The notes under the pieces: model-generated
What the model saw: only the letters and a program-made list of their open reading frames with translations
Databases searched by the model: none
What the model was told of the DNA's origin: nothing
Source: Callorhinchus milii
Taxonomy: Eukaryota
Assembly: GCF_018977255.1 (NCBI RefSeq)
Contig: NW_024704751.1
Coordinates: 8,370,001-8,434,000, forward strand
DNA length: 64,000 nucleotides
Direction: 5' to 3'
Made by a program: the position numbers and the translations under genes
Shown: positions 27,301 through 64,000 of the stretch, one piece after another
Position numbering within the stretch: the first letter of the stretch is position 1
Layout of the letters: each line of letters starts with the position of its first letter

Positions 27301-29002
27301 TGTGTTCCCTAATCAATATTCTATCCCACACAGATAGCAAACACAAGTATGGACCAGCTCCCTCACTGCTGAACTGGAAGCTTATCCAGGAGAAGTTACC
27401 ATGGAATGTCGTGATCCTACTTGGAGGTGGCTTTGCTCTGGCTGAAGGCAGTGAGGTAGAGTGTCATCCAATCAAGCTTTCCCTCGGGATCAGTCTATAG
27501 CAGCTTAGTGTAGGGGTCAATGACCAGTGCATTTCTTCTCCTTCAAGGAATCGGGGCTCTCCACTTGGCTTGGAAGCCAGCTGATTCCTCTGCAGAATAT
27601 CCCGCCCTGGGCCATCGTAATCGTCCTGTGTTTGTTGGTGGCGACCTTCACGGAATGTGCCAGCAACACAGCCACGACCTCACTCTTCCTGCCCATCCTG
27701 GCTTCCATGGTAAGACTACTCGCTGTCTCCGACACTCAACGCCCGTGCGCACAAATTTCCATGTGTCTGGAACGGAATGCGCATTCGTTTCTCTGGATGG
27801 ACGCATTTGCTTACCAAATACGCACACTCACACGGACTTCACGTAACTCTCTCACTCACACGTACTTTCTCTCCCAGCAATCCCTGTCTGAAGTAGTCTA
27901 AAGCCTCGTCTCTGGTGTTGTGCTGTCGCTATGCTTTTTGTGTGTTCTGTGTGTTTCGAGTCCCTGGATTTTGAGAGCCGTTATCTGTTTTTGACCGATT
28001 CCAGGCACAGCGTATCGGGATCCACCCGCTGTACATCATGCTGCCGTGTACAATCTGCGCTTCATTTGCTTTCATGCTGCCTGTGGCCACGCCACCAAAC
28101 TCCATTGTATTCTCCTACGGTTACTTGAAGGTGTCGGACATGGTGAGTGTATCAAAGATAACATTTCCAAACTGACAATGGTACCAACCTGCCTTATATT
28201 GTGCCTTTCACCTGGAATAAAGCCCAGAACAATAATATTAGGATTCACCAAGACTGTAAAGTAAGAGGACACCGGTTTTGAGTTGCAAAACGGGACGATT
28301 TCAGGACAGACACCAGGAAGTGTTTCTTTACCCAGAGAGTAATTAACCACCAGAACAGGTTGCCGGGAAGGGTAGTTTAGGCCAGGATAATGGACTCATT
28401 TAAAAAGCAGCTGGACACTGTGCGGAGGGGAAGGTAGGGTGAGTGTTCTGGAGGGGTGGGAATTTGATGGCCCAAAGGTTCTTCTTCATCCAAACCAATC
28501 TTGTGATCTTGTAACCAAACAGGGAGGAGAGGATAGGAATTTGAAGGGTTGATGAAAAGCACAGTTAATGAGATTTGTTTTTAAGCGGGATGTAAGGGAT
28601 TATAAGGGAGGGAAAAAAGGCACAAGGCGTTTGGGGAGAGAGAATCAGACTGCGGATTCAGTGCCTGAATGCTCATTGATACGCAGTATCTGGGCTCACG
28701 CACGAAGCATGGTCACTTGAGTGAAATACAGTGTCTGTGGATGCGTACGCAAGACAAGTCATGGTCTTCAGGAGAGAAGTAGGGTCAAACGATAAATGCC
28801 AAAGAAATTTTGTTCTTGCCACCAGCAAGCTTCCGTAAGCTTGTTTGCTGACTGTTCTCCCTGTGTTACACAGGCCAAAACGGGCATAATAGTCAATATC
28901 CTGGGAGTGCTCACCATATCGCTGGCCATCAACACGTGGGGTCAAGTCTTGTTCAACCTGGACTCCTTCCCATCCTGGGCCAACAGCACCAAGATTCCCT
29001 GA
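18358..29002 (+). CDS. SLC13A2: Na+/dicarboxylate cotransporter NaDC1, complete (~605 aa, including a probable extra 57-nt exon)
   Basis: Exons 18358-18459, 20543-20671, 21852-21988, 22649-22854, (23474-23530), 24186[or 24153/24156]-24375, 24631-24753, 26117-26332, 26547-26653, 27334-27455, 27548-27709, 28005-28142, 28874-29002. NaDC1-type motifs [43 protein letters not shown]; both SNT motifs intact. Order SARM1-SLC46A1-SLC13A2 matches human 17q11.2. Confidence 0.93.
19855..20360. mobile_element. Two divergently oriented SINE copies in SLC13A2 intron 1
   Basis: Minus copy ~19855-20165 and plus 3' half ~20185-20360; another minus tail at ~19012-19146. Confidence 0.75.
24950..25345 (+). mobile_element. 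Deu-domain SINE
   Basis: gggtcagaaggttatgggttcaaatccc head; aaagatcccacagcactat..ctcccggtgtcctggccaaca core. Confidence 0.75.
25690..25800 (-). mobile_element. Penelope-like terminal repeat carrying a degenerate minimal hammerhead ribozyme motif
   Basis: Minus strand reads CTGACAA-A-GGGTC-ATG-GACCC-GAAACGTT. Confidence 0.5.
28290..28510 (+). mobile_element. CR1-type LINE 3' end
   Basis: caggaagtgtttctttacccagagag..ggatagga-type tail; a similar copy lies at ~20940-21150. Confidence 0.6.
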
Positions 29003-44619: not shown

Positions 44620-45784
44620 CTTTTAATGAAAAGGTCTGATTATTTATGGTCTCAATAGTTCTCTCCCTTGGCACGGACTACAGACGATCCAGAACCCCGC
44701 TGCTCTGTCCTCTCCCACACCAGGCTCCTCGAGTCCACCGATCCCAGACTCACTCAGCTCAACTGGCTCCCCATCTACTAGCAGAACACATTCAAGATCC
44801 TTGTTCTCTCATTCAAATGCCCCCACAATCGCCCCTCCCACCCCATGTTTGCGAACTCCTTCAACTATGCTTAACACAGACACAGTTTAAACAGCAGAAA
44901 CTTCATCTCTCCTCTTGTGAAGCATTCCTGCCAGTGAATGTCCACCCAAACTGTAAAAAAACACAGTGCTAGATATTAATAATAATAATATTCTTGCATT
45001 TCATATAGTGCCTGATCACATCTCTGAGATGCCTCAAAGTGATTCACAGAATATACCATATAGTGAATCAACTGTATATTTTGTAGGTGAAACACAATTG
45101 CACACAGTGATGTCCCACAGACAGTTGTGGATTGAGTGACCAAATTATTATTATTATCATCTTTTTTTAAGGGATTTTTATACACTGAGACTGAGGTGGT
45201 TTAATGGATAGTGAAGATCAGACTGTAGAATGCATGTGGTTTGTGTTCTCTTCCTCTCTTCCTCAAAATCTCAAAATCAGCCTGATTTGGGGGCACTTTT
45301 AGCTCTAGTTTTGACAGCAATATGTTGATGTAAGAGGCTTTTTAAGTTAAATTATCATTCCCTTTAATTTTCTCCTAAATTGAGGGGTGGGGGTCTGAGC
45401 TGTGGTTCAGCATGACACTGCCCAGCTATTTATATGCTCTGTTTGTCTCTCTGTGCGCTCAGCTCATGCGCTTTTGACGCATCAAGTCCCAGCTCATGGT
45501 ATCAATGTGATGTCGGTCACAGCTGAGGTTGGGACAGACTGAGCTGGAGTTGGGAGGGGAATGATCAGCAAGAAGACAATCAGCAAAACAGATCCCCCTG
45601 GACAGTCCCCCTGATCTCCAGACCCAGGTTGTGAACACAGGACAGGAGAGTCGGGGCAAAAGCCCCCAATCCATCTCTGGGACACACTGGGCTGATAGGG
45701 ACACCCGCACACACCAGGTTCTCCATCTCTTCACTGCTGAGACTCACGCTGTGTGTGTGTGAGTGTGTGAGTGAGTGAGTGGGA

Positions 45785-48700
45785 ATGTTTGCAGACACAT
45801 TGCTTCCCACCCTAAGGTTTCTCAGGGCCAACTGGAGCTATCTGGTTTTAATCCTGACGCCTATTATACTTTTGCCTTTACCCCTCCTGATACCGAGCAA
45901 GGTGAGATCTTTAACATACTTTACTTCTACTCTAGTTATATACCCGTCCTCTGACAACCCCCCCCCCCCCCCCCCCCCACCCCAATAGATCCATCCTACC
46001 TTCTTCTGCATCCATTGCACTCAGCCTCCAGGTGGAAGAGAGTTTAGTGGAAATCCAATGGAAATCCACAACAGCTCAATCAGTGTCTGCAGCAAACAAA
46101 CTGGTTGATGTTTGGGGGTTGACCCTTCAATCAGAATTGGAGTTGGGGCAGAGGTGCCAGACATAGAACCTCAGTGGGTGCCCAGTACAGGAAGTTTGAG
46201 CTGATTCACTTTATCTTCTCCTTTGTCTCCTCCAGACCCTCCTCGTCAACCACGCTTTCGGTCACCCTCCTATACCCCTACCCTCCCTGCTGTCCACCCT
46301 TCCTGATCCCAGTCCCAACCCCCAGCTCGGGTCCAAATCCTTGACTGTCCAACGCCTTGGGACTTCTTCCTGATGTGATGTTGTTGTTACAGATAGCGAC
46401 TTGTGGATACACCATTCTCCTCATGGCTGTGTTCTGGAGCACGGAAGTCATTCCTTTGGGCATCACATCGCTCATTCCCATAGTCCTCATCCCAATGTTT
46501 GGAATCATGACAACTGAAAAAGTGAGCAAGGTTCAGCCTAGTCAATCATCACGTCACAAATACCTCTCGACGCACACAGGCAGTGACAAAACATAAACAT
46601 TCACATCATTACTATTGTGTTGGCTTCACCACAATCGACAGGGCTTTCTGTCCAATGCCTACCATCTACATTCATGATGGCAGAGCTTCATTGGATAAGT
46701 AAGCACAGCACATCTGCTTTAACATTAGTCTTGAAAGATAAGAGATTGTATTGTGGGAGAAACGCCAGTAAATGGTGAGACACCTTAAGTTATAACATTT
46801 AGAATTATCTGACATTTCATTATCCGACAATTTCACCCACAAAATATACAACCAATTCACTCTACAGTATATGCTGTAAAGGCACTATATCAAGTATTAT
46901 TATTGTTGGTTCAGATGGACATTCTTTACCCTACATAACACAGCAAATACACAGCTGGCAGCCTCAGTAACACAGTCACACCAATGAAATGCTACCATGT
47001 GGTTCTTTGTGTTCTAGGTGGCTTTGCAGTACATGAAGGATACGACCATACTCTTTGTTGGCGGTTTAATGGTAGCTATCGCCATTGAAGAATGGAACCT
47101 CCACAAACGTATTGCATTGAAGGTGCTCTTGTATGTTGGAGTCAGGCCGGCTTGGTAACAATGACTTACATTGATATAGCGCCCTTCACGCGCATTAGTG
47201 TGCTAGAGCACTTGACAGTGGCGGTGTCTGACACTGAGCCAAGGGGAGAGTGAGGTGGTGGGGAGGTGACCCTAAGCATGATCAAAAAGGAAGGTCTTTA
47301 GGCGGGATTTGAAAGCAGCAAGGGAAGGGGCCAAGGCGGAAGGATTGAGGCAGAGAGTTTTACAGTTTCGGGGCGTAGGGACTGAAGGCACGGTCATCGA
47401 TGGTGGAGCAGAGGGGACGAGGGACAAACAGGAGGCCGGAACCAGCAGAGAAAAGTGAAAAGGCGCTGTATCAAATGCAAGGATTATTATTATTATGGGC
47501 AAACTGTTAAAGTTCTTGTTGCTCGCAGGTTAATAATGGGACTGATGGGGGTGACAGCATTCCTCTCAATGTGGATCAGCAACACGGCCACCACTGCAAT
47601 GATGGTCCCCATCGCACAAGCCGTGTTGGATCAGCTCAGTCTGAGCGAGGATAGGTTTGACGAGACAAGTCAAGAGGAGCTGCAAACAAAACAATCACTT
47701 AACCTGCTACCCGATGAAATACCAGTCTTGAAAATGTTTCCAGGTAACAGTCATAAAACAGCTTGCAAGACTTGTTTGACTTTGAAATGCATTTCTTCTT
47801 CTATAGTTTGCCCTCAATAACAACAATTTCATGCGGTGCCTTTCACGTCAGGAGGACTGGCACTAACAGGAGGAGGGAGGAAGTGGTTGGTGATGGAAAC
47901 AGAAGCCTCGGGATGCTCCGGGATGTAAGGGGCTCCGAGACACTATCCCGTGTGAAGGGTGTTGTACGAGTTCAGATTGTTTTTGTAGGGTTGACTTTGG
48001 CCTTCAGGATGATTGTGCAGCTACCAGTGTCCTGTCTGAGCTCCTATCAGTGGTTTCGTTATTTTCTGACACACTCACTCCACATTAAAATTGAAATGGA
48101 AATGTTTCAGCAGACAATGAAAAGGCAACCAGAGAGAGAAGGAATCTCTACAAGCTGGTCACTCTGTGCATCTGTTACTCCGCCAGCATCGGTGGCACAG
48201 CGACCCTGACCGGCACAGGACCCAACCTGGTGTTGGAGGGACAGTTTAACCAGTGAGTGCTGCCGTTTCTATTGCTCACACAGCTACTCTCAGTGGCTCA
48301 ATCTACGTGAAAGTGTTGAAGCTACCTAAACTCTATCCCAGGCTGTGAATTACTGCCCAAACTGTCCACTAACATTCTCTGCCCTGTGAGAATATTAGCT
48401 GAGGTTCTCACCCGCCTCCCATCAGAAATATTGCTCTCATTCCCTCTTGTGCTTCATTGTAAATAGTCAGAATCCAGAGCGCCCACTCTGGATAACATTA
48501 CTCTGTGATGCACACAGCCATTCTGTTATATAAATCCTAATAGAATACCGGTGCAGATAAAACCAGTATCAGGCTTAGAGTTGGTGGGTTAAACACTCCC
48601 TGACACCTTCACGTAAACACATGCATTTGTAGCCGAGATTCTTTGCATGTTCTCTTCATTTGTCTGATTCGAAGGATTTGGAACTTATGTTCTAATAAGG

Positions 48701-51700
48701 TAAACCCAATGAATCTCATTTTTTAGTCTCCTCTGCCTCTAATGCTTCTTTTAGTTGATCTCAACTGTCTTTCCGAAGCCTCCTGGATTCTCACTGCTTG
48801 TGTTCCTTGTCTATTTCTGTGTCTAACATATTTGTGTTTATTTAAAAAGGTTATTCCCAGAAAATGGGGGCGTAATTACTTTTAGTTCGTGGTTTGTGTA
48901 CGCTTTCCCCAACATGCTGATCATGCTGTTTCTCTGCTGGATATGGCTGCAGATATATTTTCTGGGATTTAAGTAAGTATCATATCTTATATAAATGTAA
49001 GTTGTTGTTATAATATTGAAAGAATGTTTTGTGGTTATGATTTGCATTTTTTGATATGTCCCTTTCCATTTTTCTTAGCTCCCCTAATCTCTTGTTTGAC
49101 CTCTTCTGTACAGTCTGGTTTGTATTCAGCCCAAGGGTCAATCTCTCCTTTCTCCCTACACACTTTATAAACCTTCCTTTTCTTCATCTCCCTTTGTATT
49201 TTACTATTTATCCAAGCTAAGGCTTAGGGACGCCGGAGTGTGTGTTGGGAGTTCTGCTGGAGTTTAACCAGCCCAAACCCTCGCCCCCCCTCCACCCCAA
49301 TCTTTTGGGCTTTGTCTTGCATGGTGAACAAGAGGAAAAATGGAAGAGTCCCTCCTTCCATGACTGGTCTGTCATCAGCAACCAAACTACTCAGACCACC
49401 ACAGAGACATGTCGCTATTCCGACATTCTATTGCCAAGCATATCTCTTTGAGCCTAGTTCAGCCTCAAGGAGACCAAATAGCTTATCTCTCCCCCAAGAA
49501 GGATAGCCACGAGTTAGTCAGTTGATATCTACCTCGGTTTGAGCCCTCATTAGCTGAATGGCAGCTTCCAGGAACTTCCTGTGAGCGATCTGGTGAACAG
49601 CACAGCTCAGCATGAAATGCCAAAGGGCACTGCCACCAGCCTCCTGGCACAGTTCAGACACATACCTTTCCTTCTACAATGTGTCATTACATAATATGGC
49701 AGTGGATAAAGCACCTTTCATGTCAGGAGAATATTTCAAAGAGCTTCATAGAGTTTACAGTGACTGTGTACTTTTGGGCAAATTGAAGTGCATTCTGAGA
49801 TGGATCTTGTTCCAACAGTTTCAAAATATTGTGGGGCTGTGGATCAGTGAAAACGTGGAAGGAGATAGCAGCCTACCAGGTCATCAAAGAGGAGTACAAG
49901 AAGTTGGGCAAGATGTCCTTTGCTGAAATCCTTGTTCTCATCCTCTTCATCTTCCTGGTGCTTCTGTGGTTCACTCGGAATCCTGGATTCATGCCTGGCT
50001 GGGCTACAGTGATCTTCGGCAAAAGCAAAAAGTAAGTTCTGTATTTTAATCCTCAAACAAATGAGCCAAACGTGGTGTTGGGTTGCATTAGCAGAGAGAT
50101 TAGCACACCCAACAAAATAAGTGGGGGGTTTTTAATTGAGAAAAACAACAACAAATTACATTTATGTAGCACCTTTCACGTCGGGAGGACAATGCAAGGC
50201 TGTGGACAGTCAGGGATTTGGAGAAGCCTGTATGGATGGTCATGAACATGGCCTGCATGAACAGCGGCTCTCCTCCTGCACCACTACTGAATGCCGAAAA
50301 GACAGAGGCTCTCCTGCTTGGCTCCCATCATTTGCCTACACCCCTCAGTCGCTGGTCACACCAAACTGCATGGATGGTCAATCCATCTGGCGCAGATACT
50401 GTGGAATCCCGGTGCTTGTTTGAGGTACTCCCTGCACTCAGCACTAGCGTGCTTCATGTCCCCTCTGATCCGCTTCACCATTGCTGGGCCAACTTTCAGG
50501 CATTCTGCTGGGTGAAGCGCTTTTTGAGATGTCCTCCTGACGTGAAAGGCGCCATATAAATGCAAATTGTTCTTCACAGTCCATTCTTCACTGCTTTTTT
50601 TCAGATATATTTCTGATGGTACAACCGTAATGTTCATTGCGCTCCTCATGTACATTCTGCCATCAAAGAGACCACGATTGGAAAGCTTGTTTAAAGACAA
50701 ATCCAGCACTGAGCAGCACATACAAGGTGTGTATCCAGGTTACGATCCTCCTCCCAGCAGTTGACACACACAGTACCTGTAACCAGTCTGTAAGGTTGCC
50801 CTGTTTGATGTGATAAGGCACAATACACTGCTGTGTGTAATTGGCTGCCGCATTTCACCCACAAAATACACAGTCAATCCACTTTTCCAGATATCCTGTG
50901 AAGCACTTTGAGATGTCTCAACGTGATAAGGCGCTATATCAAATGCAAGGATTATTATTATTATTAATAATAGAAATGTAAGTTAGGTCTTTCTCCCTCA
51001 TCAGCAGTGGAAGGCTAACCAGAAGTTATTAAAATGTCAACGTGTGATTTTCAAAGCTGGTTTATTGTTGTATTTCTTTATTAAATGCTGAACAGATGAA
51101 AAGCCTTCAACACTGTTGGATTGGGAAGTCGTACAACATAAACTGCCGTGGAATGTGATGCTGTTATTGGGAGGAGGCTTTGCCTTGGCAAAGAGCTGTG
51201 AGGTAATTGTAAATGCTTATCCGTCCACCTCCACAAGCAGAAATGGCTGCATGACACTTGCTCAGCGACACTTTGTGTGTAGTAACCCAAACAGTCCTGT
51301 CTAAAAGAGAACCCTCTACATCAAGATCTGAAAAAGAACTTGTTCGGGTGAACTCATTGATTGTATTTGAATCCAGTCTGGACTTCCAAAGAGCCATTTT
51401 ACAGGAGCTCAACCCTTTCTAATCCCAAAGCCAAATCTGTTCAACTTTCGGTCCCGATCTCCTCATTCAGTGAAAACCTTGTCTCACACAAATCAAACTC
51501 TCACCCATGGAGGTGGTTTTCCCATCTTCATAGATGATGACTAACTGATGTCAAGCAGTTGGGTTGGATTGGTCATTCTTCTTGTTGCATCCGGAGACAG
51601 GAGCCAGACAGATTTCCCACAGAATTAGAAGCTCTGACCCTGGTATTGTGACATGATTCTGTTCTACTTTCAGGCATCAGGTCTGTCCAAATGGTTGGGT

Positions 51701-52978
51701 AACCAGCTCAACCCACTGAAGACCATCCCACACTGGGGCATCGTGATTATATTATGCTTACTGATATCCATCTTTACAGAATTCACCAGCAACACTGCCA
51801 CTGCCACTCTCTTCCTCCCCATCCTGGCTTCACTGGTAAGCAGGGCCTCTTTTCATTTATTTCACAAGTTGTCTCTTGCTCAAGTCTACATCATATAAGA
51901 TGCATGGTAAGACGGAAACCATTCAGGGTTCAATGTGAGTTTTCCCAGTTCAATTTGTCTTCAATATAAGCGTTTAGGTGGGCTTTAAAGCGGTCACCTC
52001 TCCCTCTCCCTCGTTCAGTGTCCGACCTGCCACAGTACAGCACCTCAAGACGTGAGGAGCATTGTATAAATGTAAGTCATTGTCTCAAAGTAAAAGATAT
52101 CTGTTGATATCTGTTGCTAACTAATTTCTTTTCTGCTTATCATTCCAGGCTGTAAAGCTTAAGATCAACCCTCTGTATGTAATGATTCCTTGCACTGTAA
52201 CTGCTTCCTTTTCCTTCATGTTGCCTGTAGCAACTCCTCCCAATGCCATAGTTTTCACCTATGGGCACTTGACAGTCATGGACATGGTAAGTAGTACAAA
52301 GAGTTGCAAGTGAGAGGATCCGAGTTCGATTCCCGGGCAGGGTGAAACGTTAGGCAAGTTTCCTTACTCCACATGTCTCTGCTTACCTGACAGTAAATAA
52401 CAACTTGTTTGTTAGTTGATTGGCAGATCGCATTTCGGGGGTAATAACTCTTTTTTTAAAAAAAACGATGTGGTCACTCAATCCACGATCGTTTGTGGAC
52501 ACTGCTGTGCCCAATTGGCTGCTGCGTTTCGCCCACAAAATACACAGTCAATTCACTTTACAGTGTGTTCTGTGAAGCGCTTTGGGACGTCCTCCCGACG
52601 TGAAAAGCGCTATATCAAATGCAAGGATTATTATTATTATTATATTCTGTAAAGCACTTTGACATGTGTTGAAGCTGTGATAAGGCGCAAATGCAAGGAT
52701 TATTATTATTATTCATTGTTATTAAATGAGTTAATTCAGTATGATTCCTTAAAAGGACCACTTTTATTCTATGTTTGTGGTATGCCACTCCTTAGGAACT
52801 TTGACTTCACCTTTTAATTTGATAAATCTAATACTATCTTTTTCTTTTATAGGTTAAGGCTGGGTTCGTTATGAACCTGGTGGGAGTGGTTTGCGTTACT
52901 CTATCCGTCAATACCTGGGGTTGGATGTTTTTCAATATGGACCAATTTCCTGCCTGGGCAAACACTACAAATTTATGA
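45785..52978 (+). CDS. SLC13A5: SLC13A5-like Na+/citrate cotransporter, copy B, intact (575 aa)
   Basis: Exons 45785-45901, 46393-46521, 47018-47154, 47529-47743, 48114-48252, 48850-48972, 49819-50031, 50605-50726, 51096-51202, 51674-51835, 52149-52286, 52853-52978; 1728 nt open. Motifs [51 protein letters not shown]. Confidence 0.8.
52300..52715 (+). mobile_element. Long-subfamily SINE plus a second tail in the last intron (duplicated at ~61768-62185)
   Basis: B box gagttcgattccc, Deu-like core, (tta)n tails. Confidence 0.85.
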
Positions 52979-53399
52979 TGTGGCAAGCTGCTCAGAAAGT
53001 CACGTCCATACCTCGTATCAAACATTATTTGAGGTTACTTACACGCCAAGAACACTGAAGCCTGCCAATCAGAATATACCATATGTTCAATGAACTCCAG
53101 AAAACAAAAAACTCCACCAAACCAAGCTGTGAAACCCCTTCCCTCCTTCTACATTAGGGTCAATTATAGTACCTTACAACCTCTTCTATGTTATTCTTAA
53201 TGGTGATATCCTGCAGTCAGGCAATGTTGGCAGCAGTTATTGGAGTCCTGGTCCTTTCCCATTTATTGCTTATTTATTCTCATTAAAAGTGATTGTGGAA
53301 TGGTGTTTAATGGCAGTTCCTCAGTTATGATTATTAAATGTATGTCTGTCCAACTACTGGGATTTTAATGATTTTTAATATATTGATAAGTTGACTCCA

Positions 53400-53650
53400 C
53401 TCCCTACTCGAGTCTCCCCAATCCGAGTTCCGACCTGCCCACAGCACCAAGCCAGTGCGTGTCAAAGTTACAAATGACGTCCTCTCTCTGTGTGCCTCCC
53501 TCTGCCTCCTTGTCCTGCTGAACCTTTTCGCTGCTTTCAACAGTGTTGATCACGCCATCCTCCTCGACTGCCTCGCCTTCATCCACTTCAGTAGGATCGC
53601 ACTGTCCTGGTTCGAGTTCTATGTGAGCTACCGCCATCACTATGCCTCTG
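53400..53650 (+). mobile_element. L2 RT-domain relic in the copy B 3' region (duplicated at ~62867-63117)
   Basis: QSEFRPAHST..VKVTNDVL..LVLLNLFAAFNSVDHAILL resembles QSGFR..HSTETAL.KV.ND...LVLLDLSAAFDTVDH. Confidence 0.8.
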
Positions 53651-53742
53651 CAAAGATTCTGGAAGGGTTAATGGCCGGTATTCATTGTCAACCCACTGAC
53701 AGACACGATGTGCAATGAAGCAACAATAGGGACAATTGCAGT

Positions 53743-53748
53743 AATAAA
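53743..53748 (+). terminator. Candidate polyadenylation signal of copy B (63210-63215 for copy C)
   Basis: AATAAA with a downstream T/GT-rich tract; ATTAAA at 53282 is an alternative. Confidence 0.45.
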
Positions 53749-54827
53749 CTGAAAGAATTGTATTTATTTTGACTTTGAGTACACAGCAGGTTAAGCCTGA
53801 CATTGATTGTATAATTAGAATGTACAGTATACTGTACTAAACACACGTAGTGAACATACACCTGGCAGTGATGAGTTCTTGTGAAGGCATTCCTGCCAGT
53901 GAATGTCCACCCGAACTATAAAAAAAAGTGCTGGATATTAATAATAATAATAATATTCTTGCATTTCATACAGTGCCTGATCACATCTCTGAGATGCCTC
54001 AAAGTGATTCACAGAATATACCATATAGCGAATCGACTGTACATTTTGTAGGTGAAACACAATTGCACACAGCGATGTCCCACAAACAGTTGTGGATTGA
54101 ATGACCAAATTATTATTATGATTATCTTTTTTTAAGGGATTTTTATACACAGACTGAGGTGGTTTAATGGATAGTGAAGATCAGACTGTAAAAGGCATGT
54201 GGTTTGTGCTCTCTTCCTCTGTCTCAAAATCAGCCTGACTTGGGGACACTTTTAGCTCTAATTTTGACAGCAATATGTTGGTGTAAGAGGTTTTTTCAGT
54301 TAAATGAATCATCCCTTTAATTTTCTCCTAAAGTTAGCTCAAACGTGAAGCATTTGCTGCCTGGTTCAGAGGGGTTTGGTGTCAATGAAAATGAATACCA
54401 AGACATTGGTGGGGCTGGGGGTGTGGGGGGTGGGGGTCTGAGCTGTGGTTCAGCATGACACTGCCCAGCTATTTACATGCTCTGTTTGTCTCTCTGTGCG
54501 CTCAGCTCATGCGCTTTTGACGCATCAAGTCCCAGCTCATGGTATCAATGTGATGTCGGTCACAGCTGAGGTTGGGACAGACTGAGCTGGAGTTGGGAGG
54601 GGAATGATCAGCAAGAAGACAATCAGCAAAACAGATCCCCCTGGACAGTCCCCCTGATCTCCAGACCCAGGTTGTGAACACAGGACAGGAGAGTCGGGGC
54701 AAAAGCCCCCAATCCATCTCTGGGACACACTGGGCTGATAGGGACACCCGCACACACCAGGTTCTCCATCTCTTCACTGCTGAGACTCACGCTGTGTGTG
54801 TGTGAGTGTGTGAGTGAGTGAGTGGGA

Positions 54828-57800
54828 ATGTTTGCAGACACATTGCTTCCCACCCTAAGGTTTCTCAGGGCCAACTGGAGCTATCTGGTTTTAATCCTGA
54901 CGCCTATTATACTTTTGCCTTTACCCCTCCTGATACCGAGCAAGGTGAGATCTTTAACATACTTTACTTCTACTCTAGTTATATACCCGTCCTCTGACAA
55001 CCCCCCCCACCCCAATAGATCCATCCTACCTTCTTCTGCATCCATTGCACTCAGCCTCCAGGTGGAAGAGAGTTTAGTGGAAATCCAATGGAAATCCACA
55101 ACAGCTCAATCAGTGTCTGCAGCAAACAAACTGGTTGATGTTTGGGGGTTGAGCCTTCAATCAGAATTGGAGTTGGGGCAGAGGTGCCAGACACAGAACC
55201 TCAGTGGGTGCCCAGTACAGGAAGTTTGAGCTGATTCACTTTATCTTCTCCTTTGTCTCCTCCAGACCCTCCTCGTCAACCACGCTTTCGGTCACCCTCC
55301 TATACCCCTACCCTCCCTGCTGTCCACCCTTCCTGATCCCAGTCCCAACCCCCAGCTCGGGTCCAAATCCTTGACTGTCCAACGCCTTGGGACTTCTTCC
55401 TGATGTGATGTTGTTGTTACAGATAGCGACTTGTGGATACACCATTCTCCTCATGGCTGTGTTCTGGAGCACGGAAGTCATTCCTTTGGGCATCACATCG
55501 CTCATTCCCATAGTCCTCATCCCAATGTTTGGAATCATGCCAAATGAAAAAGTGAGCAAGGTTCAGCCTAGTCAATCATCACGTCACAAATACCTCTCGA
55601 CGCACACAGGCAGTGACAAAACATAAACATTCACATCATTACTATTGTGTTGGCTTCACCACAATCGACAGGGCTTTCTGTCCAATGCCTACCATCTACA
55701 TTCATGATGGCAGAGCTTCATTGGATAAGTAAGCACAGCACATCCGCTTTAACATTAGTCTTGAAAGATAAGAGATTGTATTGTGGGAGAGACGCCAGTA
55801 AATGGTGAGACACCTTAAGTTATAACATTTAGAATTATCTGACATTTCATTATCCGACAATTTCACCCACAAAATATACAACCAATTCACTCTACAGTAT
55901 ATGCTGTGAAGGCACTATATCAAGTATTATTATTGTTGGTTCAGATGGACATTCTTTACCCTATATAACACAGCAAATACACAGCTGGCAGCCTCAGTAA
56001 CACAGTCACACCAATGAAATGCTACCATGTGGTTCTTTGTGTTCTAGGTGGCTTTGCAGTACATGAAGGATACGACCATGCTCTTTGTTGGCGGTTTAAT
56101 GGTAGCTATCGCCATTGAAGAATGGAACCTCCACAAACGTATTGCATTGAGGGTGCTCTTGTATGTTGGAGTCAAGCCGGCTTGGTAACAATGACCTACA
56201 TTGATATAGCGCCCTTCACGCGCATTAGTGTGCTAGAGCACTTGACAGTGGCGGTGTCTGACACTGAGCCAAGGGGAGAGTGAGGTGGTGGGGAGGTGAC
56301 CCTAAGCATGATCAAAACGGAAGGTCTTTAGGCGGGATTTGAAAGCAGCAAGGGAAGGGGCCAAGGCGGAAGGATTGAGGCAGAGAGTTTTACAGTTTCG
56401 GGGCGTAGGGACTGAAGGCACGGTCATCGATGGTGGAGCAGAGGGGACGAGGGACAAACAGGAGGCCGGAACCAGAAGAGCGGAGACAGCGGGTGGAGGA
56501 GAGGGTTGGGGGTGTGTGAACAGATCGGAGAGGTAGGGAGATGCGAGGGCATGAAGGGATTTGAAAACGATTGAGAGGATCTTGAAATCGATCCTGGACT
56601 ACAATACATCCAGAAAGAGCTCCCTCTCTTTCGGAGTGTAGTAGCTGAGAATGAGAGGGAGCAGAAGGGAGAGCCTCTCTCAACCTCTTACATCTTGTGG
56701 GCTTGTGGAGTCCTGTAGCTTAGTGGTTAGAGCACTCGCTTTGGGCAAGTTTCCTTACTCCACACGCCTGATAATCCCTCCAAAAAAAATAATAATAAAA
56801 AATTGGTCACTTCAATCCACAACTGTTTGTGGGACACTGGTGTGTGCAATCGGCTGCAGCATTTTGCCCACAAATGTACAGTCAATTCACTTTACAGTCT
56901 ATTCTGAGAAGCACTTTGAGACGTCTAGAAGACGTGAAAAGCGCTGTATCAAATGCAAGGATTATTATTATTATTATAGGCAAATTGTTAAAGTTCTTGT
57001 TGCTCGCAGGTTAACACTGGGACTGATGGGGGTGACAGCATTCCTCTCCATGTGGATCAGCAACACGGCCACCACTGCAATGATGGTCCCCATCGCAAAA
57101 GCCGTGTTGGATCAGCTCAGTCTGAGCGAGGATAAGTTTGACCAGACAATTGAAGAGGAGTTGCAAACAAAACAATCACTTAACCTGCTACCCGATGAAA
57201 TACCAGTCTTGAAAATATTTCCAGGTAACAGTCATAAAACAGCTTGCAAGACTTGTTTGACATTGAAATGCATTTCTTCTTCTATAGTTTGTCCTCAATA
57301 ACAACAATTTCATGCGGTGCCTTTCACGTCAGGAGGACTGGCACTAACAGGAGGAGGGAGGAAGTGGTTGGTGATGGAAACAGAAGCCTCGGGATGCTCC
57401 GGGATGTAAGGGGATCCGAGACACTATCCCGTGTGAAGGGTGTTGTACGAGTTCAGATTGTTTTTGTAGGGTTGACTTTGGCCTTCAGGATGATTGTGCA
57501 GCTACCAGTGTCCTGTCTGAGCTCCTATCAGTGGTTTGGTTATTTTCTGACACACTCACTCCACGTTAAAATTGAAATGGGAATGTTTCAACAGATAATG
57601 AAAAGGCAACCAGAGCGAGAAGGAATCTCTACAAGCTGGTCACTCTGTGCATCTGTTACTCCGCCAGCATCGGTGGCACAGCGACCCTGACCGGCACAGG
57701 ACCCAACCTGGTGTTGGAGGGACAGTTTAACCAGTGAGTGCTGCCGTTTCTATTGCTCACACAGCTACTCTCAGTGGCTCAATCTACGTGAAAGTGTTGA

Positions 57801-60800
57801 AGCTACCTAAACTCTATCCCAGGCTGTGAATTACTGCCCAAACTGTCCACTAACATTCTCTGCCCTGTGAGAATATTAGCTGAGGTTCTCACCCGCCTCC
57901 CATCAGAAATATTGCTCTCATTCCCTCTTGTGCTTCATTGTAAATAGTCAGAATCCAGAGCGCCCACTCTGGATAACATTACTCTGTGATGCACACAGCC
58001 ATTCTGTTATATAAACCCTAATAGAATACCGGTGCAGATAAAACCAGTATCAGGCTTAGAGTTGGTGGGTTAAACACTCCCTGACACCTTCACGTAAACA
58101 CATGCATTTGTAGCCGAGATTCTTTGCATGTTCTCTTCATTTGTCTGATTCGAAGGATTTGGAACTTATGTTCTAATAAGGTAAACCCAATGAATCTCAT
58201 TTTTTAGTCTCCTCTGCCTCTAATGCTTCTTTTAGTTGATCTCAACTGTCTTTCCGAAGCCTCCTGGATTCTCACTGCTTGTGTTCCTTGTCTATTTCTG
58301 TGTCTAACATATTTGTGTTTATTTAAAAAGGTTATTCCCAGAAAATGGGGGCGTAATTACTTTTAGTTCGTGGTTTGTGTACGCTTTCCCCAACATGCTG
58401 GTCATGCTGTTTCTCTGCTGGATATGGCTGCAGATATATTTTCTGGGATTTAAGTAAGTATCATATCTTATATAAATGTAAGTTGTTGTTATAATATTGA
58501 AAGAATGTTTTGTGGTTATGATTTGCATTTTTTGATATGTCCCTTTCCATTTTTCTTAGCTCCCCTAATCTCTTGTTTGACCTCTTCTGTACAGTCTGGT
58601 TTGTATTCAGCCCAAGGGTCAATCTCTCCTTTCTCCCTACACACTTTATAAACCTTCCTTTTCTTCATCTCCCTTTGTATTTTACTATTTATCCAAGCTA
58701 AGGCTTAGGGACGCCGGAGTGTGTGTTGGGAGTTCTGCTGGAGTTTAACCAGCCCAAACCCTCGCCCCCCCTCCACCCCAATCTTTTGGGCTTTGTCTTG
58801 CATGGTGAACAAGAGAAAAATGGAAGAGTCCCTCCTTCCATGACTGGTCTGTCATCAGCAACCAAACTACTCAGACCACCACAGAGACATGTCGCTATTC
58901 CGACATTCTATTGCCAAGCATATCTCTTTGAGCCTAGTTCAGCCTCAAGGAGACCAAATAGCTTATCTCTCCCCCAAGAAGGATAGCCACGAGTTAGTCA
59001 GTTGATATCTACCTCGGTTTGAGCCCTCATTAGCTGAATGGCAGCTTCCAGGAACTTCCTGTGAGCGATCTGGTGAACAGCACAGCTCAGCATGAAATGC
59101 CAAAGGGCACTGCCACCAGCCTCCTGGCACAGTTCAGACACATACCTTTCCTTCTACAATGTGTCATTACATAATATGGCAGTGGATATGTCAGGAGAAT
59201 ATTTCAAAGAGCTTCATAGAGTTTACAGTGACTGTGTACTTTTGGGCAAATTGAAGTGCATTCTGAGATGGATCTTGTTCCAACAGTTTCAAAATATTGT
59301 GGGGCTGTGGATTATTGAAAGTGTGGAAGGAGTTAGTAGCCTACCAGGTCATCAAAGAGGAGTACAAGAAGTTGGGCAAGATGTCCTTTGCTGAAATCCT
59401 TGTTCTCATCCTCTTCATCTTCCTGGTGCTTCTGTGGTTCACTCGGAATCCTGGATTCATGCCTGGCTGGGCTACAGTGATCTTCGGCAAAAGCAAAGAG
59501 TAAGTTCTGTATTTTAATCCTCAAACAAATGAGGCAAACGTGGTGTTGGGTTGCATTAGCAGAGAGATTAGCACACCCAACAAAATAAGTGGGGGGTCTT
59601 TAATTGAGAAAAACAACAACAAATTACATTTATGTAGCACCTTTCACGTCGGGAGGACAATGCAAGGCTGTGGACAGTCAGGGATTTGGAGAAGCCTGTA
59701 TGGATGGTCATGAACATGGCCTGCATGAACAGCGGCTCTCCTCCTGCACCACTACTGAATGCCGAAAAGACAGAGGCTCTCCTGCTTGGCTCCCATCATT
59801 TGCCTACACCCCTCAGTCGCTGGTCACACCAAACTGCATGGATGGTCAATCCATCTGGCGCAGATACTGTGGAATCCCGGTGCTTGTTTGAGGTACTCCC
59901 TGCACTCAGCACTAGCGTGCTTCATGTCCCCTCTGATCCGCTTCACCATTGCTGGGCCAACTTTCAGGCATTCTGCTGGGTGAAGCGCTTTTTGAGATGT
60001 CCTCCTGACGTGAAAGGCGCCATATAAATGCAAATTGTTCTTCACAGTCCATTCTTCACTGCTTTTTTTCAGATATATTTCTGATGGTACAACCGTAATG
60101 TTCATTGCGCTCCTCATGTACATTCTGCCATCAAAGAGACCACGATTGGAAAGCTTGTTTAAAGACAAATCCAGCACTGAGCAGCACATACAAGGTGTGT
60201 ATCCAGGTTACGATCCTCCTCCCAGCAGTTGACACACACAGTACCTGTAACCAGTCTGTAAGGTTGCCCTGTTTGATGTGATAAGGCACAATACACTGCT
60301 GTGTGTAATTGGCTGCCGCATTTCACCCACAAAATACACAGTCAATCCACTTTTCCAGATATCCTGTGAAGCACTTTGAGATGTCTCAACGTGATAAGGC
60401 GCTATATCAAATGCAAGGATTATTATTATTATTAATAATAGAAATGTAAGTTAGGTCTTTCTCCCTCATCAGCAGTGGAAGGCTAACCAGAAGTTATTAA
60501 AATGTCAACGTGTGATTTTCAAAGCTGGTTTATTGTTGTATTTCTTTATTAAATGCTGAACAGATGAAAAGCCTTCAACACTGTTGGATTGGGAAGTCGT
60601 ACAACATAAACTGCCGTGGAATGTGATGCTGTTATTGGGAGGAGGCTTTGCCTTGGCAAAGAGCTGTGAGGTAATTGTAAATGCTTATCCGTCCACCTCC
60701 ACAAGCAGAAATGGCTGCATGACACTTGCTCAGCGACACTTTGTGTGTAGTAACCCAAACAGTCCTGTCTAAAAGAGAACCCTCTACATCAAGATCTGAA

Positions 60801-62444
60801 AAAGAACTTGTTCGGGTGAACTCATTGATTGTATTTGAATCCAGTCTGGACTTCCAAAGAGCCATTTTACAGGAGCTCAACCCTTTCTAATCCCAAAGCC
60901 AAATCTGTTCAACTTTCGGTCCCGATCTCCTCATTCAGTGAAAACCTTGTCTCACACAAATCAAACTCTCACCCATGGTGGTGGTTTTCCCATCTTCATA
61001 GATGATGACTGACTGATGTCAAGCAGTTGGGTTGGATTGGTCATTCTTCTTGTTGCATCCGGAGACAGGAGCCAGACAGATTTCCCACAGAATTAGAAGC
61101 TCTGACCCTGGTATTGTGACATGATTCTGTTCTACTTTCAGGCATCAGGTCTGTCCAGATGGTTGGGTAACCAGCTCAACCCACTGAAGACCATCCCACA
61201 CTGGGGCATCGTGATTATATTATGCTTACTGATATCCATCTTTACAGAATTCACCAGCAACACTGCCACTGCCACTCTCTTCCTCCCCATCCTGGCTTCA
61301 CTGGTAAGCAGGGCCTCTTTTCATTTATTTCACAAGTTGTCTCTTGCTCAAGTCTACATCATATAAGATGCATGGTAAGACGGAAACCATTCAGGGTTCA
61401 ATGTGAGTTTTCCCAGTTCAATTTGTCTTCAATATAAGCGTTTAGGTGGGCTTTAAAGCGGTCACCCCTCCCTCTCCCTCGTTCAGTGTCCGACCTGCCA
61501 CAGTACAGCACCTCAAGACGTGAGGAGCATTGTATAAATGTAAGTCATTGTCTCAAAGTAAAAGATATCTGTTGATATCTGTTGCTAACTAATTTCTTTT
61601 CTGCTTATCATTCCAGGCTGTAAAGCTTAAGATCAACCCTCTGTATGTAATGATTCCTTGCACTGTAACTGCTTCCTTTTCCTTCATGTTGCCTGTAGCA
61701 ACTCCTCCCAATGCCATAGTTTTCACCTATGGGCACTTGACAGTCATGGACATGGTAAGTAGTACAAAGAGTTGCAAGTGAGAGGATCCGAGTTCGATTC
61801 CCGGGCAGGGTGAAACGTTAGGCAAGTTTCCTTACTCCACATGTCTCTGCTTACCTGACAGTAAATAACAACTTGTTAGTTAGTTGATTGGTAGATCGCA
61901 TTTCGGGGGTAATAACCCTTTTTTTTTAAAAAAACGATGTGGTCACTCAATCCACGATCGTTTATGGACACTGCTGTGCGCAATTGGCTGCTGCGTTTCG
62001 CCCACAAAATACACAGTCAATTCACTTTACAGTGTGTTCTGTGAAGCGCTTTGGGACGTCCTCCCGACATGAAAAGCGCTATATCAAATGCAAGGATTAT
62101 TATTATTATTATATTCTGTAAAGCACTTTGACATGTGTTGAAGCTGTGATAAGGCGCAAATGCAAGGATTATTATTATTATTCATAGTTAAATGAGTTAA
62201 TTCAGTGTGATTCCTTAAAAGGACCACTTTTATTCTATGTTTGTGGTATGCCACTCCTTAGGAACTTTGACTTCACCTTTTAATTTGATAAATCTAATAC
62301 TATCTTTTTGTTTTATAGCTTAAGGCTGGGTTCGTTATGAACCTGGTGGGAGTGGTTTGCGTTACTGTATCCGTCAATACCTGGGGTTGGATGTTTTTCA
62401 ATATGGACCAATTTCCTGCCTGGGCAAACACTACGAATTTATGA
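54828..62444 (+). CDS. SLC13A5: SLC13A5-like Na+/citrate cotransporter, copy C, intact (575 aa)
   Basis: Exons 54828-54944, 55423-55551, 56048-56184, 57010-57224, 57595-57733, 58331-58453, 59287-59499, 60073-60194, 60564-60670, 61142-61303, 61617-61754, 62319-62444; exon sizes equal copy B; 24 aa differences by hand count. Confidence 0.8.
56290..56978. mobile_element. Antisense L2 3' fragment followed by a near full-length SINE (largely deleted in copy B)
   Basis: L2 ~56290-56600(-); SINE ~56707-56978(+). Confidence 0.85.
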
Positions 62445-63343
62445 TGTGGCAAGCTGCTCAGAAAGTCACGTCCATACCTCGTATCAAACATTATTTGAGG
62501 TTACTTACACGCCAAGAACACTGAAGCCTGCCAATCAGAATATACCATATGTTCAATGAACTCCAGAAAACAAAAAAACTCCACCAAACCAAGCTGTGAA
62601 ACCCCTTTCCTCCTTCTACATTAGGGTCAATTATAGTACCTTACAACCTCTTCTATGTTATTCTTAATGGTGATATCCTGCAGTCAGGCAATGTTGGCAG
62701 CAGTTATTGGAGTCCTGGTCCTTTCCCATTTATTGCTTATTTATTCTCATTAAAAGTGATTGTGGAATGGTGTTTAATGGCAGTTCCTCAGTTATGATTA
62801 TTAAATGTATGTCTGTCCAACTACTGGGATTTTAATGATTTTTAATATATTGATAAGTTGACTCCACTCCCTACTCGAGTCTCCCCAATCCGAGTTCCGA
62901 CCTGCCCACAGCACCAAGCCAGTGCGTGTCAAAGTTACAAATGACGTCCTCTCTCTGTGTGCCTCCCTCTGCCTCCTTGTCCTGCTGAACCTTTTCGCTG
63001 CTTTCAACAGTGTTGATCACGCCATCCTCCTCGACTGCCTCGCCTTCATCCACTTCAGTAGGATCGCACTGTCCTGGTTCGAGTTCTATGTGAGCTACCG
63101 CCATCACTATGCCTCTGCAAAGATTCTGGAAGGGTTAATGGCCGGTATTCATTGTCAACCCACTGACAGACACGATGTGCAATGAAGCAACAATAGGGAC
63201 AATTGCAGTAATAAACTGAAAGAATTGTATTTATTTTGACTTTGAGTACACAGCAGGTTAAGCCTGACATTGATTGTATAATTAGAATGTACAGTATACT
63301 GTACTAAACACACGTAGTGAACATACACCTGGCAGTGATGAGT

Positions 63344-64000
63344 TCTTGTGAAGGCATTCCTGCCAGTGAATGTCCACCCGAACTATAAAAAAAAGTGCTG
63401 GATATTAATAATAATAATAATATTCTTGCATTTCATACAGTGCCTGATCACATCTCTGAGATGCCTCAAAGTGATTCACAGAATATACCATATAGCGAAT
63501 CGACTGTACATTTTGTAGGTGAAACACAATTGCACACAGCGATGTCCCACAAACAGTTGTGGATTGAATGACCAAATTATTATTATGATTATCTTTTTTN
63601 AAGGGATTTTTATACACAGACTGAGGTGGTTTAATGGATAGTGAAGATCAGACTGTAAAAGGCATGTGGTTTGTGCTCTCTTCCTCTGTCTCAAAATCAG
63701 CCTGACTTGGGGACACTTTTAGCTCTAATTTTGACAGCAATATGTTGGTGTAAGAGGTTTTTTCAGTTAAATGAATCATCCCTTTAATTTTCTCCTAAAG
63801 TTAGCTCAAACGTGAAGCATTTGCTGCCTGGTTCAGAGGGGTTTGGTGTCAATGAAAATGAATACCAAGACATTGGTGGGGCTGGGGGTGTGGGGGGTGG
63901 GGGTCTGAGCTGTGGTTCAGCATGACACTGCCCAGCTATTTACATGCTCTGTTTGTCTCTCTGTGCGCTCAGCTCATGCGCTTTTGACGCATCAAGTCCC
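63344..64000 (+). repeat. Start of tandem unit 3 (upstream region of a probable further SLC13A5-like copy)
   Basis: Essentially identical to 53877-54533 apart from an N at 63600; the offset predicts an ATG near 64295, outside the window. Confidence 0.88.

What the first reader, a model, noticed from the sequence alone, without database searches (positions are those of the whole stretch)
45785..62444. Copies B and C: exons more diverged than introns, and changes overwhelmingly nonsynonymous
Manual comparison of the 1728-nt CDSs gives 29 nt differences: 25 nonsynonymous (24 aa) and 4 synonymous, ~1.7%. Aligned introns show only about 30 substitutions in ~5.4 kb (~0.6%), and some introns are almost invariant. 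This reverses the normal pattern and suggests diversifying selection, or conversion that homogenises everything except selected codons. Relative to copy A, derived states fall in B for exons 3-6 and in C for exons 2, 7 and 12, so both copies are changing.
Basis: partly seen in the sequence, partly recalled or inferred. Interest (0 to 1): 0.85.

Follow-up and report, generated by a model that had tools for sequence, protein, structure and literature searches.

The report
Patchy divergence between twin transporter genes
Two nearly identical neighbouring copies of a citrate/dicarboxylate-type transporter gene (probably in a fish) do differ more in their coding parts than in their introns, but the differences sit in a few patches and loosely constrained loops, so adaptive divergence is possible yet unproven.

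Summary
Copies B (45785-52978) and C (54828-62444) are intact 12-exon SLC13 genes. They differ at 29 of 1731 exon positions: 25 replacement changes in 24 codons and 4 silent. Introns differ at 40 of 5434 positions, and flanks at 3 of 1848.

- dN/dS is 1.85 (Fisher p=0.37). A pairwise codon model gives omega 2.46, p=0.069.
- Replacement rate against intron rate gives p=4e-4, but only if sites are independent, and they are not.
- 52 of the 72 unit-wide differences lie in three patches: 47050-48135, 49845-49869 (six changes in 25 nt, all derived in C) and 52410-52969. The rest of the unit is 0.27% diverged.
- After allowing for the patches and the six-change burst, the exon excess is about 1.4-1.6-fold, with p between 0.0003 and 0.09 depending on treatment.
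- At least 10 of the 24 replacements lie in two poorly conserved loops. Most others are conservative.
- No donor for the derived states exists in copies A or Z.

Best reading: a gene-conversion or unequal-crossover mosaic among three near-identical units (B, C, D), with weak constraint and one complex mutation. Selection preserving divergence islands remains a live rival.

The parts
45785..52978 (+). Copy B, an intact 12-exon SLC13 gene. Exons: 45785-45901, 46393-46521, 47018-47154, 47529-47743, 48111(48114)-48252, 48850-48972, 49819-50031, 50605-50726, 51096-51202, 51674-51835, 52149-52286, 52853-52978.
   Evidence: GT-AG model with an open frame. Exons collinear on Pfam PF00939. The E7-E8-E9 junctions appear in a spliced contig of run X8 (record 27).
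54828..62444 (+). Copy C, an intact 12-exon SLC13 gene. Exons: 54828-54944, 55423-55551, 56048-56184, 57010-57224, 57592(57595)-57733, 58331-58453, 59287-59499, 60073-60194, 60564-60670, 61142-61303, 61617-61754, 62319-62444.
   Evidence: Mapped from B. All splice sites are canonical if exon 5 starts at 57595. The codon model ran without meeting a stop codon.
45381..54423 (+). Tandem unit B (9043 nt).
   Evidence: Self-BLAST and MAFFT. Identity to the older A-B spacer drops to about 89-91% left of 45381.
54424..63890 (+). Tandem unit C (9467 nt). It is 99.2% identical to unit B over 9014 aligned columns.
63891..64000 (+). Start of a further unit, D. It carries C's letter at both B/C-variable sites in its first 110 nt.
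   Evidence: The B-C and C-D spacers are identical over 559 nt.
47050..48135 (+). Divergence island 1, from exon 3 to the start of exon 5. It holds 33 of the 72 B/C differences: exons 15/345, introns 18/741 (12/735 without the indel-edge columns).
59313..59337 (+). Exon 7 burst in C (B coordinates 49845-49869). Six substitutions in 25 nt change five codons: S>L, V>L, T>V, I>L, A>V. All are derived in C.
   Evidence: No donor in the window. The segment is a variable linker.
52410..52969 (+). Divergence island 3, covering the 3' part of intron 11 and exon 12. It holds 13 differences (10 intron, 3 exon).
56479..56926 (+). A 448-nt stretch of intron 3 present in C and absent from B. A carries a SINE-like repeat at the matching place, so this is probably a deletion in B.
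33300..44184 (+). Copy A, an older array member used as outgroup. Against B: pS 0.28, pN 0.14.
20546..28996 (+). Copy Z, a more distant SLC13 paralog. Exon 1 was not located. dN/dS against B is 0.10.

Best explanation
B and C belong to a young tandem array of SLC13 (NaDC1/NaCT-like) sodium-coupled carboxylate transporter genes: Z, A, B, C and at least the start of D. Units B, C and D are kept almost identical, about 0.2-0.3% diverged including introns and spacers, by recent duplication and/or interlocus gene conversion and unequal crossing-over.

The B/C differences are what that homogenisation has not erased or has re-imported. There are two islands of older divergence, exon 3 to exon 5 and intron 11 to exon 12. 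There is also one complex, probably single-event, mutation of six bases in a variable linker of C's exon 7.

Many of the replaced residues lie in poorly conserved loops. Most of the others are conservative exchanges, so replacements accumulate at close to the neutral rate.

Shown: the counts, the mosaic, the polarity, the absence of a donor in A or Z, and the loop positions. Inferred: that conversion or crossover made the mosaic, that the burst was one event, and that constraint rather than adaptation sets the replacement rate.
For: 1. Mosaic. 52 of 72 differences lie in three patches totalling about 1.7 kb. The remaining ~7.3 kb holds 20 (0.27%). Clumping is significant for non-exon columns alone, with a longest identical run of 1381 columns (p=0.0006).
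2. Spacers are as homogenised as genes: 3/1848, and 0/559 between the B-C and C-D spacers.
3. A third copy is involved. D matches C at both variable sites in its first 110 nt. Independent contigs show a third exon 4 haplotype, and C-type letters at about twice B's depth at 48084-48135.
4. N:S is 25:4 against a neutral expectation of about 22:7 (p=0.37). Silent sites (1.0%) are no less diverged than introns (0.74%).
5. Weak constraint. The five exon 7 burst codons lie in a segment that is variable and carries an indel in 9 homologous exon fragments from other organisms, while the following helix is invariant. Five exon 4 replacements lie beyond NaCT residue 162, in a loop reported as unresolved by cryo-EM and free of disease mutations (PMC8203205, passage read). 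About 15 of the 22 replaced codons where A or Z could be compared are also variable among those paralogs (my tally).
6. Older pairs show ordinary constraint: A-B dN/dS 0.44, Z-B 0.10.
7. The burst is entirely C-derived. It lies between an intron with 0 differences in 833 nt and about 160 identical exon bases. Clustered multinucleotide changes are known to mimic positive selection (bioRxiv 10.1101/165969, abstract start seen).
Against: An exon excess survives every correction I tried.
- Collapsing neighbours within 12 nt still gives 18/1731 against 31/5434, p=0.045.
- The stratified test gives p=0.009 when the burst is counted once and the six indel-edge columns are dropped.
- Inside island 1, exons are 2.7 times more diverged than introns (15/345 against 12/735, p=0.011; p=0.09 with the edge columns).

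Strict neutrality predicts a ratio of at most 1.

- The N:S ratio is higher for B-C than for A-B (24:4 against 175:106, p=0.013).
- The pairwise omega of 2.46 is near significance (p=0.069).
- Closely spaced pairs (5 nt or less apart) occur 6 times in exons and 0 times in introns outside the indel edge. A purely mutational cause does not predict that.
- Conversion is inferred from pattern only. No donor tract was demonstrated.
Confidence: 0.5

Rival explanations
1. [quoted passage not shown] On this reading B and C (and D) are acquiring different properties. Conversion erases neutral differences, while replacements in exons 3-5, 7 and 12 are kept with a little linked intron divergence.
For: The replacement rate is 2.5 times the intron rate (p=4e-4 naive). 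The exon excess persists after stratifying and collapsing (p=0.005-0.09). Exons exceed introns inside island 1 (p=0.011). Omega is 2.46 (p=0.069). Both copies carry derived replacements, 14 in C and 8 in B. The C lineage shows 14 replacement and 0 silent changes among polarised sites. The five burst replacements all raise hydrophobicity. Exon 3 and exon 7 replacements lie in or beside the arm helices H4c and H6b. The interplay of these helices is reported as functionally important (PMC12204159 and PMC11584011, passages read). The review PMC3924837 (passages read) describes a divergence peak in an exon with low flanking introns as the signature of this process.
Against: dN/dS is not significantly above 1. 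The result depends on how the 25-nt burst and the six indel-edge columns are treated. Replacements are mostly conservative (I/M, K/R, L/M, I/V, V/L) or lie in hypervariable loops, and none touches either SNT motif. With only 4 silent differences the test has little power. Islands of 0.5-1.1 kb would include an exon by chance, because exons are about 600 nt apart.
Confidence: 0.3
2. Exon-limited conversion from a diverged paralog not visible in this window. Candidates are copy D, the SLC13 pair noted on another piece of the genome, or a cDNA intermediate. Such conversion would import closely spaced differences into exons only.
For: Closely spaced difference pairs occur in exons only (6 against 0). 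One 90-nt perfect A=C tract (B coordinates 47508-47597) covers 3 B/C differences. A-B silent divergence is low in exons 2, 5 and 7 (0.09-0.13, against 0.20-0.46 in the other nine exons), which shows that exchange between older copies has happened. The scan noted another SLC13 tandem pair elsewhere in the genome (unchecked).
Against: Derived states are absent from A by definition and from Z at all but 2 sites. No 12-mer or longer carrying two or more of C's burst states occurs elsewhere in the window. All other perfect A-matching tracts are 31 nt or shorter. Islands 1 and 3 include intron differences, so they are not exon-limited.
Confidence: 0.12
3. Assembly or consensus error in a collapsed or mis-polished tandem repeat creates some of the differences, in particular the exon 7 burst.
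For: In contigs of two other samples (X1, X2), C's letters at the six burst sites were listed at 0 of 6. Contigs spanning them read as B (records 3 and 20).
Against: C's letter was seen in those independent samples at 12 of the 27 exon sites and 11 of the 34 intron sites inside the laid stretch, and B's letter was seen beside it at several. Logan contigs drop minority paths, and A shares B's letters at the burst, so absence there proves nothing. Errors would not avoid silent positions or keep the frame.
Confidence: 0.05

Closest known systems
Divergence islands in duplicates under concerted evolution (human red/green opsin exon 5; Teshima and Innan 2008, as reviewed in PMC3924837)
   Same: Tandem copies are kept near-identical, introns included. 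Divergence is concentrated in a few short regions that contain replacement changes, and exons are more diverged than the flanking introns.
   Different: Here no functional difference between the copies is known. The replaced residues are mostly conservative or in loops. The peaks are not shown to be older than speciation, and significance is borderline.
Mosaic divergence of three tandem HMA4 copies in Arabidopsis halleri through interlocus gene conversion (bioRxiv 10.1101/2025.10.29.685298; abstract and outline seen)
   Same: Three tandem, recently duplicated transporter genes whose divergence varies along the gene as a mosaic.
   Different: That work rests on population data and a model. Here there is one assembly plus collapsed contigs, and a different transporter family and kingdom.
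Multinucleotide mutations that mimic positive selection (bioRxiv 10.1101/165969; title and start of abstract seen)
   Same: Several adjacent changes on one lineage, nearly all replacement, inflate dN/dS. The exon 7 burst (six in 25 nt) and five further pairs 5 nt or less apart fit this.
   Different: Six changes spread over 25 nt is larger than the usual tandem double or triple. No mechanism or template was found.
Human SLC13A5 (NaCT) and SLC13A2 (NaDC1), solved structures 7JSK and 8W6C
   Same: Each exon tested aligns to both with E-values from 1e-8 to 1e-21. Both SNT motifs are present. The 12 exons encode about 575 aa.
   Different: Humans have a single gene of each. Here there are four to five tandem copies. 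Exon scores do not decide between A2 and A5: NaCT is better for exons 7 and 12, NaDC1 for exons 4 and 10, and exons 2 and 3 are equal.

Membership tests
SLC13 / DASS sodium-coupled anion transporters (Pfam PF00939 Na_sulph_symp) | Sequence match to the family profile, collinear along the gene | tested here: met
   7 of the 10 B exons tested hit PF00939 at profile positions 80-120, 121-167, 166-205, 209-243, 248-287, 308-337 and 341-394, in exon order. Exons 1, 2 and 8 gave no Pfam hit. Exon 2 matches solved SLC13 structures.
SLC13 / DASS sodium-coupled anion transporters (Pfam PF00939 Na_sulph_symp) | Two Ser-Asn-Thr/Val hairpin-tip motifs | tested here: met
   SNT in exon 4 aligns to NaCT and NaDC1 SNT. 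SNT in exon 10 aligns to NaDC1 SNV. B and C are identical at both. That these motifs bind Na+ and substrate is taken from PMC12204159 (passage read) and from recall.
SLC13 / DASS sodium-coupled anion transporters (Pfam PF00939 Na_sulph_symp) | Na+-coupled di/tricarboxylate or sulfate transport | not testable with these tools
   Needs uptake assays.
Orthology to SLC13A2 versus SLC13A5 | Consistently best match to one human member | tested here: inconclusive
   Bits, NaCT against NaDC1: exon 2 42.8/42.4, exon 3 63.0/62.2, exon 4 50.3/55.0, exon 7 76.9/54.7, exon 10 55.3/61.8, exon 12 45.4/36.8. The SARM1 and vitronectin neighbours (unchecked notes) resemble the human SLC13A2 locus; that resemblance is recalled, not tested.
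Gene pair under positive (diversifying) selection | dN/dS significantly above 1 | tested here: not met
   dN/dS 1.85, Fisher p=0.37. Omega 2.46, LRT p=0.069.
Gene pair under positive (diversifying) selection | Replacement rate above the local neutral (intron) rate, with clustered changes allowed for | tested here: inconclusive
   Naive p=4e-4. Stratified p=0.00025-0.092 over 12 settings. Collapsing neighbours gives p=0.004-0.045.
Concerted evolution with divergence islands | Near-identity that includes introns and spacers, with significantly heterogeneous divergence | tested here: met
   99.2% identity over 9014 columns. Dispersion 6.6 (3.9 for non-exon columns only), reached by 0 of 5000 shuffles.
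Concerted evolution with divergence islands | Paralogs more alike within a species than orthologs are between species (ongoing conversion) | not testable with these tools
   No related eukaryotic genome could be reached. The best exon 7 hits in the protein collection are 69% identical or less.
Complex or multinucleotide mutation | Several changes within a few nucleotides, all on one lineage | tested here: met
   Six changes at 49845-49869, all C-derived against A. B and C share four other states that differ from A around them.
Complex or multinucleotide mutation | The changes arose in a single event | not testable with these tools
   Needs population haplotypes or D's sequence.

The most novel reading that the evidence does not exclude
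The near-identical array members are being pushed apart by selection at the two cytoplasmic 'arm' elements that couple the moving transport domain to the scaffold, and at the large intracellular loop. These are H4c and its continuation (exons 3-4) and the linker leading into H6b (exon 7). Gene conversion erases everything else. On this reading the array is a natural set of kinetic or regulatory variants of a citrate/dicarboxylate transporter, held apart in the way exon 5 holds the red and green opsins apart.
Probability: 0.25. Interest if true: 0.55.

Novelty: new member of a known kind. Interest (0 to 1): 0.35.

Why it matters
If selection really holds these copies apart, the array would be a compact natural experiment. 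It would show which residues tune an elevator-type SLC13 transporter, and it would be a vertebrate example of divergence maintained against gene conversion.

If, as I think somewhat more likely, it is a conversion mosaic with weak constraint and one complex mutation, it is an ordinary young tandem array. Its main value is then cautionary. A 25:4 replacement-to-silent count and "exons more diverged than introns" can arise without adaptive evolution when sites are not independent.

Tried and rejected
- Conversion from A or Z as the source of the differences: rejected for all but one tract.
- A local template for the exon 7 burst, direct or inverted, within 1.5 kb either side or anywhere in the window: only two chance 9-mers were found.
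- CpG or GC richness of exons as a cause: rejected. CpG transitions are 2 of 29 in exons and 3 of 40 in introns. GC is 0.466 against 0.437.
- Mis-annotation of the exon 4 loop as coding: rejected. The frame stays open and the GTAACAG donor is conserved in A, B and C, with A 9 nt longer.
- Finding this species' own, or close relatives', exon 7 fragments in the protein collection, to see whether C's motif exists elsewhere: 11 hits, all 69% identical or less, so no answer.
- Reading D's states from public runs: all four runs laid are collapsed contigs swamped by intronic repeats. Only hints could be drawn, no copy number or haplotypes.
- Literature: two searches listed no paper on tandem SLC13 arrays in fish. 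None of the 15 papers listed contains 'slc13a2'.
- The joined (spliced) protein was not searched, folded or mapped on a 3D model, as the operators' note requires. Site mapping is by exon-wise alignment to PDB sequences only.
- codeml and HyPhy are not installed, so no branch-site or MNM-aware test was run.
- Supplementary files were not asked for.
Full report
**What is there.** The window carries a head-to-tail array of SLC13-type transporter genes on the + strand. The members are Z (20546-28996, distant), A (33300-44184), B (45785-52978) and C (54828-62444), plus the first 110 nt of a further unit D at 63891. Earlier notes of this scan place SARM1 and vitronectin genes just upstream, and rhodanese genes 9.8 kb past the window end (unchecked). 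That leaves room for about one more unit.

I built B's model from reading frames and GT-AG sites. It has 12 exons, 1728 nt plus a stop, and no internal stop. Seven of the 10 exons tested match Pfam Na_sulph_symp (PF00939) at successive profile positions. Exon by exon the peptides align to human NaCT, NaDC1, NaS1 and NaDC3 structures. The scores do not decide between SLC13A5 and SLC13A2. A spliced contig in run X8 confirms the exon 7-8-9 junctions (record 27).

C maps exon for exon. The upstream exon 5 acceptor is AG only in B, and AA in A and C. All three copies share a CAG 3 nt downstream, so the likely product is 575 aa. The counts are unaffected.

**The observation.** A MAFFT alignment of units B (45381-54423) and C (54424-63890) has 9014 aligned columns, 72 substitutions and 8 indels.

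| Class | Differences | Rate |
|---|---|---|
| Exons | 29/1731 | 1.68% |
| Introns | 40/5434 | 0.74% |
| Flanks | 3/1848 | 0.16% |

Introns 6 and 8 are identical. Six of the intron differences lie within 10 nt of a 448-nt indel and are probably alignment-edge effects.

Codon by codon there are 25 replacement changes in 24 codons and 4 silent ones (plus the split codon at 50030).

Polarised by A, 14 exon differences are derived in C and 8 in B. Six cannot be aligned and one matches neither copy.

**Is it more than chance?**
- Against silent sites: pN 0.0187, pS 0.0102, dN/dS 1.85, Fisher p=0.37. My pairwise GY94 fit gives omega 2.46, LRT 3.31, p=0.069.
- Against introns: p=4e-4, and p=1.4e-5 against introns plus flanks. 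This assumes independent sites.

Independence fails. The index of dispersion of differences in 500-column bins is 6.6 (3.9 for non-exon columns alone). None of 5000 shuffles reached either value, and the longest identical run is 1381 columns (p=0.0006).

52 of the 72 differences lie in three patches:
- 47050-48135: 33 differences.
- 49845-49869: 6 differences in 25 nt.
- 52410-52969: 13 differences.

The remaining ~7.3 kb holds 20 (0.27%).

Conditioning on each exon's own stratum (the exon plus flanking intron) gives 29 observed exon differences against 15.9-21.0 expected. With the burst counted once it is 24 against 14.7-18.9. One-sided p runs from 0.00025 to 0.092 over the 12 settings. Collapsing neighbours within 12 nt gives 18/1731 against 31/5434, p=0.045. 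Inside island 1, exons are 15/345 against introns 12/735 (p=0.011), or 18/741 with the edge columns (p=0.09).

So a modest exon excess of roughly 1.4-1.6-fold survives. Its significance depends on defensible but arbitrary choices. CpG and GC content do not explain it.

**Where the differences come from.** Derived states are not copied from A or Z. Only 2 of about 21 polarised derived states match Z. Perfect A-matching tracts around the sites are 31 nt or shorter, with one exception. C equals A for 90 nt across the start of exon 4 (B coordinates 47508-47597), a tract that holds three B/C differences. Z agrees with A and C at two of these, so B is probably the changed copy there.

The exon 7 burst is C-derived. 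B and C share four states that differ from A around it, and B equals A at all six sites. No template for C's version exists in the window.

D's first 110 nt carry C's letter at both variable sites, and the B-C and C-D spacers are identical over 559 nt. So C and D are the closest pair there, and B is the outlier.

**Independent data.** Only collapsed Logan contigs were available.
- In two samples of another study (X1, X2), C's letter was listed at 12 of the 27 exon sites and 11 of the 34 intron sites inside 47000-52999. B's letter stood beside it at several. Much of the divergence is therefore real and present in other individuals.
- C's letters at the six burst sites were listed at 0 of 6, and contigs spanning them read as B. 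Because such contigs drop minority paths, and A shares B's letters there, this is no proof of absence.
- 17 of the 40 listed rows are not B/C differences. Five match A's state.
- Three (47661, 47686, 47715) are replacement changes that define a third exon 4 loop haplotype.
- Four more rows were not shown by the tool.

**Where the replaced residues sit.**
- The five exon 7 burst codons align to NaCT 289, 290, 292, 296 and 297. In 9 homologous exon fragments from other organisms this segment is variable and carries an indel. From the following Glu onward, 21 columns are invariant. The conserved part includes the Tyr and Gly that the NaS1 structure paper places in helix H6b (PMC11584011, passage read).
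- Five exon 4 replacements lie after NaCT residue 162. This is a loop that a commentary on the NaCT structure calls unresolved and free of disease mutations (PMC8203205, passage read).
- Exon 3 replacements align to NaCT 88, 112 and 120, and exon 12 replacements to 526 and 542.
- Most exchanges are conservative, and neither SNT motif is touched.
- My assignment of residues 100-120 to helix H4c rests partly on PMC12204159 (passages read) and partly on recall.

**Context.** Older pairs show ordinary constraint: A-B pS 0.28, pN 0.14, dN/dS 0.44, and Z-B 0.10. The B-C N:S ratio (24:4) is higher than A-B's (175:106; p=0.013). That is expected for very young duplicates under relaxed constraint, as well as under selection. 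A-B silent divergence is low in exons 2, 5 and 7 (0.09-0.13, against 0.20-0.46 in the other nine exons). This points to older exchanges between A and the B/C lineage.

**Verdict.** The claim of diversifying selection does not reach significance by the standard test. By the intron comparison it rests on non-independent sites.

The best-supported picture is a conversion or unequal-crossover mosaic among three near-identical units, with weak constraint at the replaced sites and one complex mutation. I give this 0.5.

Selection that preserves divergence islands against conversion, a known phenomenon (PMC3924837, passages read), remains a serious rival at about 0.3. Conversion from unseen paralogs is about 0.12, and assembly artefact about 0.05.

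Noticed in passing
window 48108-48116 (B), 57589-57597 (C), 36603-36611 (A): Exon 5 acceptor. B has a tandem CAGCAG (NAGNAG) acceptor, created by the B-derived G at 48110. A and C have CAACAG, so only the downstream site is usable there. B could produce a form one codon longer.
   Followed up: partly
window 36740-36755 and 37771-37790 (copy A): With B-like splice sites, A's exon 6 is 122 nt instead of 123 and reads into a stop. The frame is restored, with one extra codon, if A's exon 5 uses a GT 4 nt downstream. A-type exon 7 sequence appears in the RNA-like run X8 at the highest depth of the family.
   Followed up: partly
window 47508-47597 (B), with the matching stretches of C and A: C and A are perfectly identical for 90 nt across the intron 3/exon 4 boundary and the first SNT motif, while B differs at three sites. 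This reflects either strong conservation plus a small burst in B, or an A-to-C conversion tract.
   Followed up: partly
window 56479-56926 (C intron 3), against B after 47448: A 448-nt stretch is absent from B. A has a SINE-like element at the matching place and B keeps only its tail, so this looks like a deletion in B inside divergence island 1.
   Followed up: partly
window 47661, 47686, 47715 (B exon 4 loop): Contigs of two other samples carry a third haplotype with three further replacement changes (D>E, T>A, D>E) together with C's letters at 47669-47680. It may be copy D or an allele.
   Followed up: partly
window 34891-35019, 36608-36745, 38258-38467 (A exons 2, 5, 7): Silent divergence between A and B is 0.09-0.13 in these exons against 0.20-0.46 in the other nine. 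This suggests older exchanges between A and the B/C lineage. The first ~185 nt of exon 7 differ at only 8 sites.
   Followed up: partly
window 33285-33302 (copy A exon 1): A has GTG where B and C have their ATG. A's first in-frame ATG is at 33300, five codons further in, so A's exon 1 encodes 34 residues instead of 39.
   Followed up: no
window 20546-28996: A fourth, more distant SLC13 gene (Z) lies upstream on the same strand. Exons 2-12 were found by tblastn at 46-87% amino-acid identity to B. Exon 1 was not located.
   Followed up: no
window 45945-45970 (B intron 1), against C near 55000: B has 13 extra bases in a C-rich run just after exon 1, a length-variable simple repeat.
   Followed up: no
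window 51133, 51145 (exon 9): A spliced exon 7-8-9 contig in run X8 matches B and C perfectly in exons 7 and 8 but has 4 differences in exon 9, where B and C are identical. The two listed are silent. This suggests another expressed B/C-like copy or an allele.
   Followed up: no
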